Positions 48,966-59,685 of a DNA stretch of 64,000 bases are shown here, one piece after another. How positions within the stretch are numbered: the stretch's first letter is position 1; each line of letters begins with the position of its first letter. The translations under genes and the position numbers were made by a program. Location: positions 3,844,001 to 3,908,000 of the forward strand of contig NW_027270890.1 of NCBI RefSeq assembly GCF_040938485.1, read 5' to 3'. Source of the DNA: Diadema antillarum. Lineage: Eukaryota. Below the pieces are notes generated by a model. It did not search any database, was not told the DNA's origin, and saw nothing but the letters and a program-made list of their open reading frames with translations.

Positions 48966-49036
48966 TCACAGTCCAGAAGTCTGTTCGACATCGTTTGCGC
49001 CGCCAGAGGAGTGGGCTATTATCCAACGATCAAAAT
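48966..49036 (-). CDS. Candidate terminal coding exon of the Ig/death-domain receptor
   Basis: Strong acceptor catcttttccag| at 49037. The phase-1 frame reads DFDRWIIAHSSGGANDVEQTSGL*; the other two phases stop within a few codons. Confidence 0.35.
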
Positions 49037-49335
49037 CTGGAAAAGATGTAATATCATCCGTTGTTATTCTTTTGAAGTGTACATAATTTTTCATACCTAT
49101 GAATGGCAACACCATTTCCATTAGGTTTTGTAACAAAATGTACTGAAAAAGTTACCAAGTCTCGATATTTTTTTTTCTTTTGAATCTAGTCGAAGTGACA
49201 TTTCTCGCCCAGTTGTAGCATATATCAGTAAAAAACAAAAATAGAAAATTTCCCATTAATTTCATTTTCCTCAACTTAAGGATTATATTGTCGAAAAAAA
49301 AATCTACTTCAAAAATGTAATGTACATAATACATA

Positions 49336-50183
49336 CAGGGTGTATGAAAAAAACCCAGGTAATGCAACTTTGGAGGGCTACAACTTCACAATTATCAGCC
49401 ATGGAGAACACAATGTTACTTGTCAGGAAAGAAGAACTCTTCTTCTTATTGGTACCTAGTCATGTTGAAAAATGTCATGAACTCAAGAACTTTAAGACAA
49501 CAATGACAAATTGCACTTTTTCCAAGTTTACGTGTCATTGTGGAGGAAGAATGCATGTCTTACTGCATAGATCATGGTTCAATGAAAGTCGCCAAACAGG
49601 CCAGCCTGTACGAACGCAGGTTTCTGTTTCGGGTTTGTGTTTAGGGTTTCTTCTCACATTTTATGGTCCATAATCTTTAGCACGTCCTTTTGTCCGATAA
49701 CGTGGTCGCTCCCCCAGAGGCCAAACAACATAGTCCATTTTACTCTACAGCTACAAACCATGTCTTGAATATGAAGAGTGGAAAATGGGTAATGGTTTAG
49801 CTTTTGAAAAAGGATCAAGTTCTCGAAAAATAGCCATGTTGAAGGTTACGAACCATGAAAGGTTAGAAGAAACCCGCCATAAGAACCTGCAGTCAGGCGG
49901 GCTGGATTTATGATTTGACCACTTTCAATGACAGATCTCATCCATGCGGTGAGACATGCATTGTTCTTTCACAATAACACTCAAACTTGGAAAAGTGTAA
50001 TTTGTCATTTTTGTCTTCAAATTTCATGAGATCAGTCAGGCATGACGTTGGTCAATATGATAAAATATCAATGGAAAGAAGCTGAGTTCCCTTTTCCTCA
50101 CAAACGATATTGCACACTCCATAGCTGACAATTGTGAAATAACAGCCTTCTAAATTTGGATTACTATCTTTTTATACGGTCTA
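49336..50183. mobile_element. Old Tc1/mariner-like MITE with diverged inverted arms of about 240 bp
   Basis: It starts TA|CAGGGTGTAT. 49480-49570 (ATGACAAATTGCACTTTTTCCAAGTTT...GCATGTCT) is the reverse complement of about 49945-50030. Confidence 0.65.
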
Positions 50184-51031
50184 TACATTCAACATTGTAA
50201 GAAGAAAGATTCCAGGCTCAGAAGAAAAAGTACTTAATTCTGTTATGCACGTGTCAGACCGTTTTAAGATAAATAATAATAATGGGTGTTTGGATTAGTA
50301 ATTGAAAATATTTTCATAGAGATGTTAATGCGTAAAACATATATCCGTTCTTTGTTGTCTCATGTTGTTTTTGTATCAATTTTAACCTAGGAATTTAAGG
50401 AAAAGAAATTCATGGAACGATATTCTATCATCCAATACGTAACGGTAAATTTTTCTGGAATGCTTGTGTGTGCATTCAGTGAAAGTTCATGAGATTCAAC
50501 CTTGCGATAATCCGATTTTTTTTTTGATAATCTAAATGGTTACATGGGATCTTCTAAACATCACGATGTGAATATAATAATGATTGTTTCGGCACACTAT
50601 ACAATCGAGATGTTGGTATTTGAGAAGACTTTAAAACTCTGTTCTTTACAAAGTGAACTGAAAAAAATATTAAGGAACATTTTATAATATATGTAAAGTT
50701 TAGTCTTTTATGAGACGCATGAGACTGCGAAGCCAAGTTAGCCTATAAAGTCGTTGTTTATCCTTGTTATGACGTGTTCTATTTCAAGGAATATTTTGAT
50801 TATTTTGACAAACATGCAAAAATTGCATCATCGGTTGAATGTCCGCTTTCCGAGAATCGGACAGGAATTTGATTTTCAAGAAGGGCACTAATACGCTAAG
50901 ACTATTACAAAATGATACCAACCGTGAAATTATTTCTTTCCTGCAAGTTATCAAAACAAACAAATAAACAAACAAATAGACAAGCAAGCAAACAAACAAA
51001 AAAATGGCTGTTTTCATGTTTCCACAGTTAC

Positions 51032-51322
51032 CTTTGAAAAAGTTCCGGTCAGTAGGGGTACACTTAGCATTCTCCATTGCCAAATTCAGTAGGACCAAAG
51101 GATTTGCGCCGGTATTTGAGCGTTGCCAAGAGTTCAGACATACCACTACAACATTGCGCGCCTTTGTCCTTTTCAATGTCCATTTTAATGGATCATCAGT
51201 TTGTTCAGATGATATGTCAAGATCTTTCAAAATGTTTTTAATTTTCTCCTTGTTGCCAATCTCCCGTATCAACTTTTCAATCTTATCGATGGGTAACCTC
51301 TTGGTAGCGTCATTCCTGAAAC
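51032..51322 (-). CDS. Death-domain exon 2 of the Ig/TM/DD receptor
   Basis: Polypyrimidine tract + TAAG acceptor and AAAG|GTAACT donor, 291 nt, phase 1-1. LPIDKIEKLIREIG...ILKDLDISSEQTD...VVVCLNSWQRSNTGANPLVLLNLAMENAK fits a six-helix death-fold pattern. Confidence 0.65.
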
Positions 51323-56799: not shown

Positions 56800-57096
56800 T
56801 TATCATGTTTCGAGGATCCATGTATTGCAAGCTGAACTTTCTAGTGGCCACTCTTCTTTCCATATCTACTTTTATTGTTATCCTTCCAAGCATGCCTAGG
56901 TGTTCTCAGTTATACTACTTAGAATGTCATATGTTATTATATACTATGTTATTCACTTTTCGCTTTGTAGTTCTGTTTTCCTCGACTGAAATTAATCGAC
57001 TAAGTGATTGTTTTACACATTGCTTTACATCATGTCACATTTTTTTCACTTCTTGTTTGATGGGAAAAAAAATAAACTGAACTGAACTGAATTGAA
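56800..57096 (+). mobile_element. LINE 3' UTR remnant with AATAAA-(CTGAA)n tail
   Basis: AAATAAACTGAACTGAACTGAATTGAA at 57070-57096, the same tail style as the other CR1/L2 fragments. Confidence 0.45.
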
Positions 57097-58447
57097 GATT
57101 AAAATGCCAGAGTTCAGGGACTCGCAGACTTCACCCCCCCCCCCCTTCCCTCTTCGACGGTGGGGAGGGGGAGCTCGTTTTAACAAATTAAGGTCATATA
57201 CCTACAAGATGATATTTCCTAAGTTTGGTGAAAATCCGTCACAGTTTTTTCAAGAAGATGCTGAAAATGTAGAAAATCCCCCTCCTCCTCTCCCCCCCCC
57301 CCAAATAGGGCACACCTGGATTAGCCATGATGAAACTTAACGTATAGTCATTTATGTCTTCATAGAAGTAACTTGGCTTTCCTCCTTTTTTTTTTCTTTT
57401 TTTTTTTTTTTTTGGGGGGGGGGGGGGGTTCGACAGACCGAAGGAGATATTAAAAAAAAAAAATCCAGAGTTTAGAGACTCCTCTTCAACCCACCCCCCC
57501 CCCCGCCCCTTCGATGGTGGGGGAGAGGGTGGAGGACTCATTCAAATGATTCAAATTAAAATTCTATCTCCGAATTTTGGTGAAAATCCGTGTTGGGGTT
57601 TAAAAGAAAATGAAAACGGTAAGGTTCATAAGCAGTTTTGTTAGACATCGAGTCCATCTGTACGTAGCACCGTTGAAGTACATGGTTGTACATTTCCCGG
57701 CAGCGTTTTTACAATCCCTGGCAAAATTCAACGTTTTTACATTTCACGGCGAGACACTTTTCCATTTACCGTGATCCATTCGATTGGTAGTGCTTAACAT
57801 CACTGTCACTCCAGCACAAGCAAGCACAGGCGGTGTAGCAGAATAAAGACACATGTCACCAAAAAAAAAAAAAAAAAAAATCAAAAGACAACAAAAAGTC
57901 AACATCTTAATTTCTGAAAGTGGTTGGTCAGTGATGTTGTGTAATCTAGTTCCCACTGCAGTCTATCATTTTGATAACTTAGATGATGTTTGATTTGCTA
58001 ATTTTGAAACGTGTAGGGGTATTTGAAAATGGCCACCTTGAGAAGAGTTGAGCCATGCAGTTAAAGGAGAGGTGAACCATGACTCAACCCTCCTCTGACT
58101 GAATGGCTCAAGCTGTCGTGGTATTGAGGTGACCGTTTTTATGATTTTATTATTCATTTTAGTCGAGCATCATGCCACAATTAAAACTATGAACTAAAAA
58201 CACAAGGAAGGTGCTTAACAAAGAACATGTCCACTTTCATAGCATGGGGATTAAGCGAATGCAGCAATATTAGTAGAAAACATCAGTGAATGTTTGAGGA
58301 AAATCGGACAATCCATTCAAGTTATGAGTTTTACAGTATCTACACAATCAATGCTGGATGAGAAGACTACTAAAGCGTATAATGTCACATGAGTAAAAAG
58401 ATATATAGAAAATATAAAGACAATTTGATATTTATTTCTATACTCAC

Positions 58448-58843
58448 AGGCACCTTTTTCGGGAGTAGGTGCTGTGACGGTGTTGTTTGCATTCGTCTGG
58501 TTTATTGAAGTCGTGGGTATGAACACGCCCTGTGTCGTTCTCTTGGTTTCGAAAGGTAGTCCACTAGCTGTGCATGTGACCGAATCGGATCCTACCAACA
58601 GCTCTATCGTAACCACCTGGGTCAGTAGTCCTTCTGTATCATTAGAAATGGTTCTCTGAATCACCCTGGCCTGGTTTGAGGTATCGTTGAATGACAAACT
58701 GATGTTAGGATAGTACCCTGTCACAGTGCATGTGAGAGATATTGTTGTATTGCTGTCCGCACTGATGTTGCAAGTTTGCATCGATTCATTTGAACTGATC
58801 GGCACACAGGTATCAATTTCAGGAAAGGTCTCTCGGGGCGTGG
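58448..58843 (-). CDS. Ig-like (C-type) domain + S/T-rich stalk exon
   Basis: gattttgcag| ... |gtgagt, 396 nt, phase 1-1. ISLTCTVTGYYPNISLSF...SVTCTAS gives the Ig cysteine pair, with several N-glycosylation sequons and a T-rich stalk. Confidence 0.85.
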
Positions 58844-59352
58844 CTGCAAAATCAATAGAACACATGCATGGACACCTCAGTCAGTGGTCAGGTTATGTAA
58901 ACATACATCCTTCAGAACTATTATATTTTATATACAAGAAGCAAAAAAAAAATAAATGCATGCCATCTAGGTTTGGTAGATAAAGTAAGGGCATGTTATA
59001 GGGTCAAAGTGTTGTGAGAGAGTCTTAGTAGTAAAAAACTGTGGAAAATTAGTCTGAAGACGGCTTTTCCTGGTTAATCGATTTTTCCTATATAAATCCC
59101 GCACCCAAAACAGTCCTAACATAAGACATTTGAAAACATTGGCGGACGTATAATGGTGTGGATAAGGTTCTTATGGAAATGTCGCGTCCAAATCGTGTCT
59201 ATGGCGGATCTGTTGACCCTGAAGTCTCTTTCGCCAGTCATAAAAGTGCTATCATGTAATTCCGTTGCAATAACTGTGTCCTCATTGTAAATGTACCATT
59301 GCCATATCAATAATTGCCAATCGTCATGATAAACACACAAGAAAGGACTTAC

Positions 59353-59685
59353 CAACAATATCGACATACGTAGAGTTGATGAGAAGTCTGCCGGTTGCCA
59401 GATCTGACACTGCACAAAAGTACCTCCCTCTGTTTCTTATTCTTATTGAGTTGATGACAAGAGAAAAGCCATCGGATATGTTGTACCAACCCTGGTCGTA
59501 CCCATCACCAAATTCTCGCTGGTTTACCTCATGGCGCATGTCTAGCGCAATCACTGGTTCTGTATTAGCGTATTCATCGCCCTTCCGCCAGGACACGGCA
59601 TAAACCGCCTTTTCATACTGACACCTCAGGGTCGCCCTGTCGCCATACTGAATAAAACGTCTAGCATCGGTGATGACTGGCGGAT
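59353..59685 (-). CDS. Ig V/I-set domain exon
   Basis: ctactcag| ... |gtaagt, 333 nt, phase 1-1. ATLRCQY...VSWRK...FSLVINSI...GRYFCAV has the canonical B-strand C, C-strand W and F-strand YxC. Confidence 0.92.

What the first reader, a model, noticed from the sequence alone, without database searches (positions are those of the whole stretch)
48966..59685. Ig-Ig-stalk-TM-death domain-death domain receptor: candidate lineage-specific immune/apoptotic receptor
Seen: five in-frame phase-1 exons on the minus strand with GT-AG sites encode an Ig V/I domain, an Ig C-like domain with a glycosylated stalk, a TM helix with a polybasic stop-transfer, and two separate death-fold-like exons. Known: vertebrate death receptors use TNFR cysteine-rich ectodomains and one DD, and the sea-cucumber transmembrane NLR AjNLRC4 couples Ig and TM to NACHT. 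Inference: this is an Ig-sensing receptor signalling through tandem DDs with no NACHT, TIR or kinase seen, possibly assembled by phase-1 exon shuffling. The signal-peptide and 5' exons were not found in the window.
Basis: partly seen in the sequence, partly recalled or inferred. Interest (0 to 1): 0.72.

Follow-up and report, generated by a model that had tools for sequence, protein, structure and literature searches.

The report
Sea-urchin Ig receptor with two death domains
This is an apparently intact gene of the sea urchin Diadema antillarum for a cell-surface protein with three immunoglobulin domains outside and two very divergent death domains inside. It belongs to an uncharacterised, sea-urchin-only gene family that probably turns ligand binding into death-domain signalling.

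Summary
On the minus strand, six in-frame exons with GT-AG sites and phase-1 introns encode a V-set Ig domain, a C-like Ig domain with 8 N-glycosylation sequons, a TM helix with a polybasic stop, two cytoplasmic helical domains and a short tail.

Two corrections:
- The first cytoplasmic exon most likely starts at 52323, not 52371.
- Two 5' exons, a signal peptide and a further V-set Ig, lie 0.2 and 8.2 kb beyond the window end. The gene has 8 exons and about 621 codons, with no NACHT, LRR, TIR or kinase.

Both cytoplasmic exons model as death folds. Type A has pLDDT 86 and Z 10.4 to the RAIDD death domain. Type B has pLDDT 70 and Z 9.9 to a PIDDosome death domain. By sequence they are barely recognisable: Pfam Death is subthreshold on A and absent on B.

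The gene is not unique. Diadema has about 8 clustered paralogues with variable Ig and A/B exon numbers. Strongylocentrotus and Lytechinus have SP-Ig-Ig-TM-(A-B)1-4 proteins, all named "uncharacterized".

No RNA run was listed, so splicing rests on paralogue conservation and on a RefSeq paralogue model. An immune or apoptotic function is inference only. The scan had not followed this family up on other DNA.

The parts
59353..59685 (-). Exon 3 of the gene model: second V-set Ig domain, phase 1 at both ends. Exons 1 and 2 lie beyond the window end: the signal peptide at contig C2:3916310-3916247 and the first V-set Ig at C2:3908538-3908191. Continued from the window numbering, these would be 72310-72247 and 64538-64191.
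   Evidence: Pfam V-set 30.9 bits against a cut-off of 26. The nearest solved sequences are pIgR, TCR V and CD8 alpha. Paralogues are 62-81% identical with dN/dS about 0.33. The outside exons are shown.
58448..58843 (-). Exon 4: membrane-proximal C-type Ig domain plus a short stalk, with 8 N-glycosylation sequons. It looks C1-set or B7-IgC-like.
   Evidence: Pfam C2-set_3 E 3e-4 and C1-set E 8e-3, both below their cut-offs. The best PDB hits of the family profile are C1-set domains: IgE heavy constant 4.8e-8 and SIRP alpha 1.8e-6. Pfam C1-set is the family matched by most members, 13 of 19, with E up to 0.1. Paralogues are 65-89% identical.
54344..54442 (-). Exon 5: transmembrane helix followed by the polybasic stop-transfer YRKYKKKKKE.
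   Evidence: Sequence and splice sites are. Only weak TM-segment Pfam matches were found. A homologous TM exon sits at the same position in the C353 paralogue.
52060..52323 (-). Exon 6: A-type death domain, 87 full codons.
   Evidence: AlphaFold2 model: pLDDT 86, pTM 0.75. Foldseek top hits are death domains with TM 0.62-0.74. VIA-align gives Z 10.4, rmsd 2.5 A over 81 residues to RAIDD DD, and the top 17 hits are all death domains. Pfam Death E 0.003, 18.0 bits against 22.6. The acceptor is conserved in 6 paralogues and used in RefSeq paralogue P0001.
51032..51322 (-). Exon 7: B-type death-fold domain, 96 full codons.
   Evidence: AlphaFold2 model: pLDDT 70. An exhaustive VIA-align search of 48,161 chains gives a best hit of 2of5_A (PIDDosome DD) at Z 9.9, rmsd 2.9 A over 88 residues. 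The top 8 are death domains and nearly all of the top 50 are DD, DED, CARD or PYD. The ESM Atlas shape search puts a death-domain-containing protein (TM 0.67) and FADD (TM 0.65) on top. There is no Pfam or PDB sequence match. The genome holds 27 copies, all open.
48966..49036 (-). Exon 8: short C-terminal tail of 23 codons, starting D-F-D, with the stop at 48968-48966. It is presumably followed by the 3' UTR.
   Evidence: The acceptor ttccag and the D/G-F-D start are conserved downstream of the B exon in two C1031 paralogues. RefSeq paralogue P0001 also continues NFFK|DFD.... The nearest polyadenylation-like signal, ATTAAA, lies 1 kb downstream, so the 3' end is not settled.

Best explanation
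The stretch is the 3' three quarters of an apparently intact 8-exon gene of Diadema antillarum, about 23 kb long with about 621 codons. It encodes a type I membrane protein: signal peptide, V-set Ig, V-set Ig, C1-like Ig with a glycosylated stalk, one TM helix, then immediately two divergent death domains (type A, type B) and a 23-residue tail.

It is one member of a clustered, sea-urchin-restricted multigene family. The cytoplasmic tails of this family are arrays of alternating A and B death domains: one pair here, up to four pairs in other species, and sometimes a canonical death domain after them.

Proposed mechanism (inferred, not shown):
1. The Ig ectodomain binds an extracellular or cell-surface ligand.
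2. Binding clusters the receptors and brings the A-B death-domain pairs together.
3. The pairs nucleate a helical death-domain assembly, of the kind formed by Fas-FADD, MyD88-IRAK or PIDD-RAIDD.
4. This recruits cytosolic death-domain adaptors or kinases from the expanded sea-urchin repertoire.
5. Adaptor recruitment leads to NF-kB-type or caspase activation.

Shown: exon chain and phases, domain identities, predicted folds, family, and distribution.
Inferred: expression, ligand binding, oligomerisation and downstream pathway.
For: Gene model:
- All borders are GT-AG and phase 1.
- Exon lengths sum to 1866 nt, or 622 codons with the stop.
- The signal-peptide exon is conserved upstream of each paralogue on the same strand.
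- N-glycosylation sequons occur only in the ectodomain exons.

Domains:
- V-set passes Pfam on both V exons.
- The C-type exon matches C1-set profiles.
- A and B fold as death domains.
- 9 of 18 A-type domains hit Pfam Death with E up to 1, best 6e-4.
- The A profile weakly finds the NRADD and LRDD death domains in the PDB.

Family:
- Diadema has paralogues on contigs C2, C114, C1031, C353 and C1220 with the same exon order.
- The RefSeq paralogue P0001 uses the same B>A, A>B and B>tail junctions.
- L. pictus P0003 is SP-Ig-Ig-TM-(A-B) repeats. S. purpuratus and L. variegatus have relatives, and A and B abut with 1-3 residues between them.
- The neighbouring L. pictus gene is also Ig plus Death.
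- The window copy keeps every invariant or near-invariant residue of both domain types.

Context: S. purpuratus has 87 death-domain proteins against 31 in human (PMC2246300), so partners are plentiful.
Against: - There is no transcript evidence. No RNA run was listed.
- No protein carrying this gene's A exon appeared among the representatives, so a public gene model for this locus could not be confirmed.
- The cytoplasmic exons evolve fast. Against the same paralogues, dN/dS is 0.4-1.3 in A and B and 0.2-0.4 in the Ig exons. A against the two closest copies gives about 1.1-1.3, which is compatible with relaxed constraint.
- Sequence support for 'death domain' is subthreshold on A and nil on B.
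- The B model is only moderately confident (pLDDT 70).
- Z scores of 8-10 are 'middling' for helical bundles, according to the tool's own caveat.
- The A model shows five DSSP helices. The expected helix 3 is a low-confidence loop.
- An A-with-B complex prediction gave no verdict.
- Nothing links the gene to immunity or apoptosis apart from its domain types.
Confidence: 0.6

Rival explanations
1. Same protein, different biology. It would be a cell-adhesion, neuronal guidance or 'dependence' receptor in the manner of UNC5 (Ig ectodomain, death domain inside), used in development or tissue homeostasis rather than in immune sensing.
For: - The Ig exons are under purifying selection and show no sign of diversifying selection: dN/dS 0.2-0.4, with the N-terminal V domain 80-92% identical among paralogues. 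This fits a conserved endogenous ligand.
- UNC5H2 DD is among the structural matches.
- V-C1-like ectodomains of the nectin, B7 and SIRP type are typically cell-cell recognition modules.
Against: - UNC5's defining TSP1, ZU5 and UPA modules are absent.
- A clustered, copy-number-variable, lineage-restricted multigene family with exon-number variation is more typical of immune or recognition families than of guidance receptors.
- The best fold matches are adaptor and death-receptor death domains (RAIDD, PIDD, FADD, TNFR1, RIPK1), not UNC5.
Confidence: 0.15
2. The window copy is a decaying or silent paralogue, at least in its cytoplasmic part. It would be a recent duplicate with an intact reading frame that is no longer under selection.
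For: - dN/dS of the A exon against the two closest paralogues is about 1.1-1.3, and of the B exon 0.6-0.7.
- No RNA run was listed.
- No protein with this A exon appeared among 1.84 billion representatives, although two other Diadema family members did.
- There is no canonical AATAAA within 3.4 kb of the stop, only ATTAAA from 1 kb on.
- The window copy lacks the third A-type exon and the extra Ig pair of its closest relative.
Against: - All eight exons are open with consensus splice sites.
- Every family-wide invariant or near-invariant core residue of A and B is kept.
- The Ig exons of the same gene are clearly constrained.
- All 27 B-type and all A-type exon copies in the genome are open within the corrected exon bounds.
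- dN/dS on 87 codons is noisy. Fast-evolving surfaces on a conserved core are usual for death domains that change partners.
Confidence: 0.12
3. The A and B domains are death folds that do not signal forward. The protein would act as a decoy or inhibitory receptor that sequesters death-domain adaptors, or as bait for pathogen effectors that target death domains.
For: - The window gene has only the divergent A-B pair. It lacks the canonical, Pfam-passing death domain that follows A-B in some relatives, such as P0010 residues 300-370 and the P0002 C-terminus.
- The cytoplasmic part evolves faster than the ectodomain, as expected for a target of antagonistic co-evolution inside the cell.
Against: There is no direct evidence. 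The short one-pair members and the long multi-pair members share the same conserved core. Nothing distinguishes an activating tail from an inhibitory one at sequence level.
Confidence: 0.08

Closest known systems
TNFR-superfamily death receptors (Fas, TNFR1, DR3, p75NTR, EDAR)
   Same: Both are type I membrane proteins whose cytoplasmic tail carries a death domain. The A and B models superpose on the Fas, TNFR1, DR3 and p75NTR death domains at Z 7-9. The expected logic is the same: clustering leads to a death-domain assembly.
   Different: The ectodomain is made of three Ig domains, not cysteine-rich TNFR repeats. The tail has two death domains in tandem, of two divergent subtypes that Pfam does not recognise. 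The death domain starts about 11 residues after the TM helix.
UNC5 netrin receptors (Ig-Ig-TSP1-TSP1-TM-ZU5-UPA-DD)
   Same: This is the only well-known receptor class, to my knowledge, that combines an Ig ectodomain, one TM helix and a cytoplasmic death domain. UNC5H2 DD is among the fold matches.
   Different: There is no TSP1, ZU5 or UPA module. There are two death domains instead of one. The family is clustered, multigene and echinoid-restricted rather than conserved across bilaterians.
IL-1R/SIGIRR-type receptors (Ig ectodomain-TM-TIR) and Toll-MyD88-Tube-Pelle signalling
   Same: An Ig ectodomain is coupled to a homotypic-interaction signalling domain. MyD88, IRAK, Pelle and Tube death domains are among the structural matches. 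The receptor could in effect carry the adaptor's death domain itself.
   Different: There is no TIR domain. Death domains sit directly on the receptor.
Uncharacterised sea-urchin proteins: XP_063959102 (L. pictus LOC135154841), LOC105438791 and LOC105443839 (S. purpuratus), XP_041470117 (L. variegatus), XP_071487189 and XP_071495348 (D. antillarum)
   Same: These are true family members: SP-Ig-Ig-TM followed by alternating A and B domains, found with E 1e-9 to 1e-29 by the A-type profile.
   Different: They have two Ig domains and 1-4 A-B pairs, and some add a canonical death domain. The window gene has three Ig domains and one A-B pair. None of them has a described function.
AjNLRC4 of the sea cucumber Apostichopus japonicus (Ig plus NACHT; PMC8699970)
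   Same: It is an echinoderm receptor that combines Ig domains with an innate-immune signalling module.
   Different: There is no NACHT domain here, and no sequence relationship was detected. The only shared feature is the presence of Ig domains.

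Membership tests
Death-fold superfamily, death-domain subfamily (Pfam PF00531, clan CL0041) | A bundle of six antiparallel helices, about 80-90 residues long | tested here: met
   Predicted models only.
- A: pLDDT 86, and 81 of 87 residues superpose on RAIDD DD at 2.5 A, Z 10.4. The top 17 hits are all death domains.
- B: pLDDT 70, and 88 of 96 residues superpose on 2of5_A at 2.9 A, Z 9.9. The top 8 are death domains and nearly all of the top 50 are death-fold. 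The Atlas top hits are a DD protein and FADD.
- Caveat: helix 3 of A is a low-confidence loop, and no experimental structure exists.
Death-fold superfamily, death-domain subfamily (Pfam PF00531, clan CL0041) | Sequence match to the Pfam Death profile above its gathering score (22.6 bits) | tested here: not met
   A scores 18.0 bits, E 0.003, covering profile positions 32-77 only. B has no hit. The relatives P0010 and P0015 do pass (25.5 and 26.9 bits), but on a third, canonical death domain outside the A and B units.
Death-fold superfamily, death-domain subfamily (Pfam PF00531, clan CL0041) | Homotypic oligomerisation with other death domains | tested here: inconclusive
   The A-with-B complex prediction gave no verdict, with score 0.00 against a mark of 0.34. 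No binding data exist.
Immunoglobulin superfamily, V-set (PF07686) | Pfam V-set above the gathering score, with the conserved Cys...Trp...Y-x-C framework | tested here: met
   The exon at 59685-59353 scores 30.9 bits against 26, with Cys21 and Cys90. The outside exon at C2:3908538-3908191 scores 31.7 bits.
Immunoglobulin C1-set (PF07654) | Pfam C1-set above the gathering score (21 bits), and C1 strand topology (A-B-E-D / C-F-G) | tested here: inconclusive
   The window exon scores 17.4 bits, below the cut-off. The family profile's best PDB hits are C1-set domains: IgE constant 4.8e-8 and SIRP alpha d3 1.8e-6. C1-set is the Pfam family hit by most members, 13 of 19. The sequence has the L-T-C-x-V-T-G-Y-Y-P motif after the first Cys.
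TNFR-superfamily death receptors | Cysteine-rich TNFR repeats in the ectodomain | tested here: not met
   Only Ig families match the ectodomain exons.
UNC5 family | TSP1 repeats outside the cell and a ZU5-UPA-DD supramodule inside | tested here: not met
   No TSP1, ZU5 or UPA match was found in any exon. Only about 11 residues separate the TM helix from the first death domain.
NLR / transmembrane NLR (AjNLRC4-like) | NACHT NTPase domain, usually with LRRs | tested here: not met
   The gene starts with a signal-peptide exon and ends at a stop inside the window. No NACHT or LRR exon lies within the model. tblastn with further family death domains found nothing more in the window.
Echinoid Ig-TM-(A-B)n family (unnamed) | SP, Ig domains, TM, then abutting alternating A-type and B-type domains with their conserved core residues (A: S-x-x-E-L-W ... 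L-C-x-W-K; B: W ... N-P-x-V-x-L-x-L-A-x-E ... C ... F-F) | tested here: met
   The window exons are rows 1 of alignments A3 and A4 and carry all the invariant and near-invariant residues. They share exon order and phases with the paralogues and domain order with P0003, P0018 and P0044.

The most novel reading that the evidence does not exclude
Sea urchins possess a so far undescribed receptor system: clustered V-V/C1-like Ig receptors whose tails are built from two previously unrecognised death-domain subtypes, A and B, arranged in alternating arrays of 1-4 pairs. The receptor would carry its own pre-assembled death-domain 'adaptor stack' and seed a signalosome directly on clustering. The tails evolve faster than the ectodomains, which could reflect rewiring of downstream partners or an arms race with intracellular pathogen effectors. 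The membrane-proximal domain may be a genuine C1-set Ig next to V domains in an invertebrate.
Probability: 0.3. Interest if true: 0.72.

Novelty: new variant of a known kind. Interest (0 to 1): 0.55.

Why it matters
- **Hidden death domains.** Counts of death-domain proteins in sea urchins (87 in S. purpuratus, PMC2246300) rest on Pfam-type profiles. The A and B domains fall below those thresholds. This family, and perhaps others, is therefore missing from such counts and is annotated only as 'Ig-like domain-containing' or 'uncharacterized'.
- **A rare receptor layout.** An Ig ectodomain wired straight to tandem death domains is uncommon. UNC5 is the main precedent. The layout gives a direct, testable case of how death-domain signalosomes can be nucleated by a receptor without a separate adaptor.
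- **Exon shuffling on view.** The variable exon number on all phase-1 borders shows exon shuffling and duplication in a living gene family.
- **Conservation relevance.** Diadema antillarum is a keystone reef grazer hit by mass die-offs in 1983-84 and 2022 (PMC13511894). Candidate immune receptor families in its genome are of practical interest for disease-response studies.
- **Caveat.** Function is inferred from domains only.

Tried and rejected
**RNA evidence.** The look-up of sequencing runs on 48900-54460 listed no run. Read laying was therefore not used and the exon joins are untested by reads.

**Sequence-only death-domain assignment.**
- PDB profile searches with the Diadema-only alignments gave nothing.
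- The enriched A profile gave only weak NRADD (E 0.07) and LRDD (E 0.16) hits, and the B profile gave none.
- hhalign of A against B gave probability 0.2% and then 6%, E 0.006, though in the same helix register.
- The ESM Atlas feature search for B returned only bacterial hypotheticals at 0.75-0.77, which is uninformative.

**Complex prediction of A with B.** No verdict, score 0.00. This is evidence neither for nor against binding.

**Retrieving the public gene model of this locus.**
- A word search used an alignment of P0003, P0008 and the window exons as separate rows. It returned only Lytechinus and Strongylocentrotus proteins.
- The A-profile search found only two other Diadema proteins.
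- All searches were exon by exon, by reference.

**Further exons.**
- tblastn with the canonical C-terminal death domains of relatives found nothing in the window or in the fetched paralogue loci.
- The third A-type exon present in two paralogues is absent here.

Rejected in favour of 52323.

**Literature.** Five full-text searches found no description of an Ig-TM-tandem-death-domain family in echinoderms. Robertson et al. 2006 on sea-urchin apoptosis genes is not in the library and could not be checked.

Full report
**Organism and place.** The window is contig C2:3844001-3908000 of a 1.75-Gb assembly in 2963 contigs. Two family proteins found later are RefSeq proteins of Diadema antillarum. 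Their contig lengths equal those of C114 and C353 of this assembly. A preprint describes a 1.73-Gb, 2,964-scaffold D. antillarum assembly. The genome is therefore the long-spined sea urchin. Contig C21 repeats this part of C2 at 100% identity in every exon tested. It is an assembly duplicate, not a paralogue.

**The exon chain.** I read the minus strand directly and tabulated the borders.
- The exons are IgV 59685-59353, IgC 58843-58448, TM 54442-54344, A ending at 52060, B 51322-51032, and tail 49036-48966.
- Every acceptor is AG, every donor GT, and every intron lies after the first base of a codon.
- Pfam V-set passes its cut-off on the first exon.
- The second exon matches IgC profiles below threshold.
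- The third exon is a hydrophobic helix followed by YRKYKKKKKE.
- Twelve N-x-S/T sequons lie in the ectodomain exons and none in the cytoplasmic ones, which fits a type I topology.

**One border needs correction.**
- In six paralogues a pyrimidine tract plus AG is conserved at the position equivalent to 52324|52323.
- The 48 nt upstream of that site are not conserved as coding sequence. Three paralogues have a stop there, one has a (TA)n run, and the closest copy differs by a frame-shifting indel.
- The RefSeq model of a paralogue (P0001) also enters its A-type exon at exactly this site (...FFI|GRHPVSLVELW).
- Both acceptors are phase 1, so the frame is unaffected and the protein is 16 residues shorter.

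**The 5' end lies outside the window.**
- A genome-wide search with the IgV exon found a weaker Ig hit 4.5 kb upstream, just past the window end.
- It is a complete V-set exon at C2:3908538-3908191, phase 1 at both ends (Pfam V-set 31.7 bits).
- A further 7.7 kb upstream, an ATG opens a 21-residue hydrophobic leader. It ends in a strong phase-1 donor, CAG|GTAAGC, at C2:3916310-3916247. An in-frame ATG lies 10 codons earlier.
- This 221-nt segment is conserved at 81-89% over its full length upstream of six paralogous loci, and in part (86 nt, about 85%) at two more. It is always on the gene's strand, and where a first Ig exon was located it lies 2-12 kb before it.
- The gene therefore has eight exons whose lengths sum to 1866 nt, or 621 codons plus stop.
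- Every search was exon by exon.

**The 3' end.** The tail exon's acceptor and its D/G-F-D start are conserved 1-2 kb downstream of the B exon in the two closest paralogues. P0001 continues NFFK|DFD... in the same way. Downstream of the stop there is no AATAAA within 3.4 kb, only ATTAAA from 1 kb on. The end of the transcript is therefore not fixed.

**The cytoplasmic exons are death folds.**
- By sequence the case is thin. Pfam Death gives E 0.003 on A, below its cut-off, and nothing on B. PDB profile searches are weak or blank.
- I built family alignments from Diadema paralogues and from the domains of the Lytechinus and Strongylocentrotus relatives: A3 with 18 rows and A4 with 20 rows. I then folded the two window exons.
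- A: pLDDT 86, pTM 0.75, five clear helices plus a low-confidence loop where helix 3 is expected. Foldseek's list is almost purely death domains, with TM 0.62-0.74. VIA-align gives Z 10.4 and 2.5 A over 81 of 87 residues to RAIDD DD, and the first 17 rows are all death domains.
- B: pLDDT 70. An exhaustive comparison with 48,161 chains puts a PIDDosome death domain first, at Z 9.9 and 2.9 A over 88 of 96 residues. LRDD1, TNFR1, FADD, ankyrin-G and RIPK1 death domains follow, and nearly all of the top 50 are DD, DED, CARD or PYD.
- The ESM Atlas shape search puts a death-domain protein and FADD on top.
- The tool warns that such Z values are middling for helical bundles. What carries the argument is that the hit lists are homogeneous and cover the full length.
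- A and B are distinct subtypes. hhalign aligns them in the same helix register, but only at E 0.006.

**A family, not a singleton.**
- The A and B exons recur together, about 0.75 kb apart and in the same order, on C2 (a second gene 70 kb upstream), C114, C1031, C353 and C1220. The Ig exons recur upstream of them.
- Members differ by whole exons. The closest relative (C114) has an extra IgC-IgV pair and a third A-type exon after B, C1031 has two IgV exons, and C353 has the window's Ig layout plus a third A-type exon after B.
- With every border in phase 1, such gains and losses keep the frame.
- An HMMER search of 1.84 billion representatives with the Diadema A profile found eight proteins at E up to 0.001. 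The five credible ones are all echinoid (D. antillarum, L. pictus, L. variegatus and one unnamed MetaClust entry). The others are a transposase fusion and two short multi-stretch matches with no family domain.
- A word search added many S. purpuratus and Lytechinus members, all named 'uncharacterized' or 'Ig-like domain-containing'.
- Mapping the A and B profiles on these proteins gives SP-Ig-Ig-TM-(A-B)1-4, with A and B abutting.
- Some relatives add a canonical, Pfam-passing death domain after A-B (P0010 residues 300-370). The window gene has none.
- In L. pictus the neighbouring gene is of the same kind.
- Five literature searches found no description of the family. The known background is the large death-domain expansion in S. 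purpuratus (PMC2246300).

**Selection.**
- Against the same three paralogues, the Ig exons show dN/dS of 0.21-0.40.
- The A and B exons show 0.41-1.28, with dN two to seven times higher at broadly similar dS.
- The fold core is nevertheless conserved across species, and no copy has a stop within the corrected exon bounds.
- I read this as fast-evolving surfaces on a conserved scaffold.
- Relaxed constraint in this copy cannot be excluded on 87-96 codons. It is kept as a rival.

**Mechanism.** The shown parts are the architecture and the folds. The rest is inference from how death domains work in Fas-FADD, the Myddosome and the PIDDosome. Ligand-driven clustering of the Ig ectodomain would bring the A-B pairs together and seed a helical death-domain assembly. 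That assembly would recruit cytosolic death-domain adaptors. A complex prediction for A with B gave no verdict. Rival readings are a guidance, adhesion or dependence receptor, a silent or decaying copy, and a decoy or inhibitory receptor.

**Verdict.**
- It is a new variant of a known kind, namely death-domain receptors, in an unstudied echinoid family.

Noticed in passing
window 58448-58843 (-), and alignment A7: The membrane-proximal Ig exon looks C1-set-like. It has an L-T-C-x-V-T-G-Y-Y-P motif. The family profile's best PDB hits are IgE constant domains, SIRP alpha d3, B7-H3 IgC and IgNAR C. Pfam C1-set is the most frequent, subthreshold, hit among 19 family members. A V-C1-like pair in an invertebrate would interest evolutionary immunologists. 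Strand topology was not modelled.
   Followed up: partly
window 51032-52323 (-) compared with 58448-59685 (-): The cytoplasmic death-domain exons diverge much faster between paralogues (50-61% identity to most copies, dN/dS 0.4-1.3) than the Ig exons of the same genes (65-92% identity, dN/dS 0.2-0.4). dS also differs between exons, for example 0.14 in the first V exon against 0.57 in A for the C114 paralogue. This hints at gene conversion or exon-level recombination.
   Followed up: partly
G000:C2:3935775-3949894 and C2:3964371-3990892 (28-83 kb beyond the window end): Four further B-type exons spaced 3.6-6.4 kb apart, with no detected A-type exon between them. Beyond them lies a second complete family gene with its signal-peptide exon at C2:3990678. 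The window gene therefore sits at the edge of a family cluster.
   Followed up: no
L039:7100-7375 (C114) and L041:9075-9335 (C353): Two paralogues carry a third, more canonical-looking A-type death-domain exon after the B exon. It starts ...GP(I/V)SYVELWEL... and ends ...AAEH(L/F)EG. The window gene has no counterpart.
   Followed up: partly
window 25239-26168 (+) and 31524-31826 (+): A rhodopsin-family GPCR split over two ORFs about 5 kb apart. Pfam 7tm_1 covers profile positions 2-194 in the first (100 bits) and 189-260 in the second (42.5 bits). It is already noted by the scan as an aminergic-like GPCR.
   Followed up: partly
window 37495-43617: An LTR retrotransposon. Two 300-nt direct repeats, 98% identical, lie 5823 nt apart and flank a 686-codon minus-strand ORF (41166-43226) with integrase zinc-binding and rve core domains. 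This looks like a recent insertion about 5 kb downstream of the receptor gene's stop.
   Followed up: partly
window 4823-5560 (+): An ORF with an ISXO2-like DDE transposase domain (PF12762, 28.2 bits). Long ORFs at 11-826 and 8052-11021 (+) have no Pfam hit and look like further mobile-element remains.
   Followed up: partly
G000:C21:1316648-1340147 compared with C2:3892900-3916400: Contig C21 duplicates this whole locus at 100% identity in every segment compared. The assembly therefore holds redundant copies, and family counts from it are upper bounds. C353 and C1220 also look like two copies of one locus, with identical flanks at the first Ig exon.
   Followed up: partly
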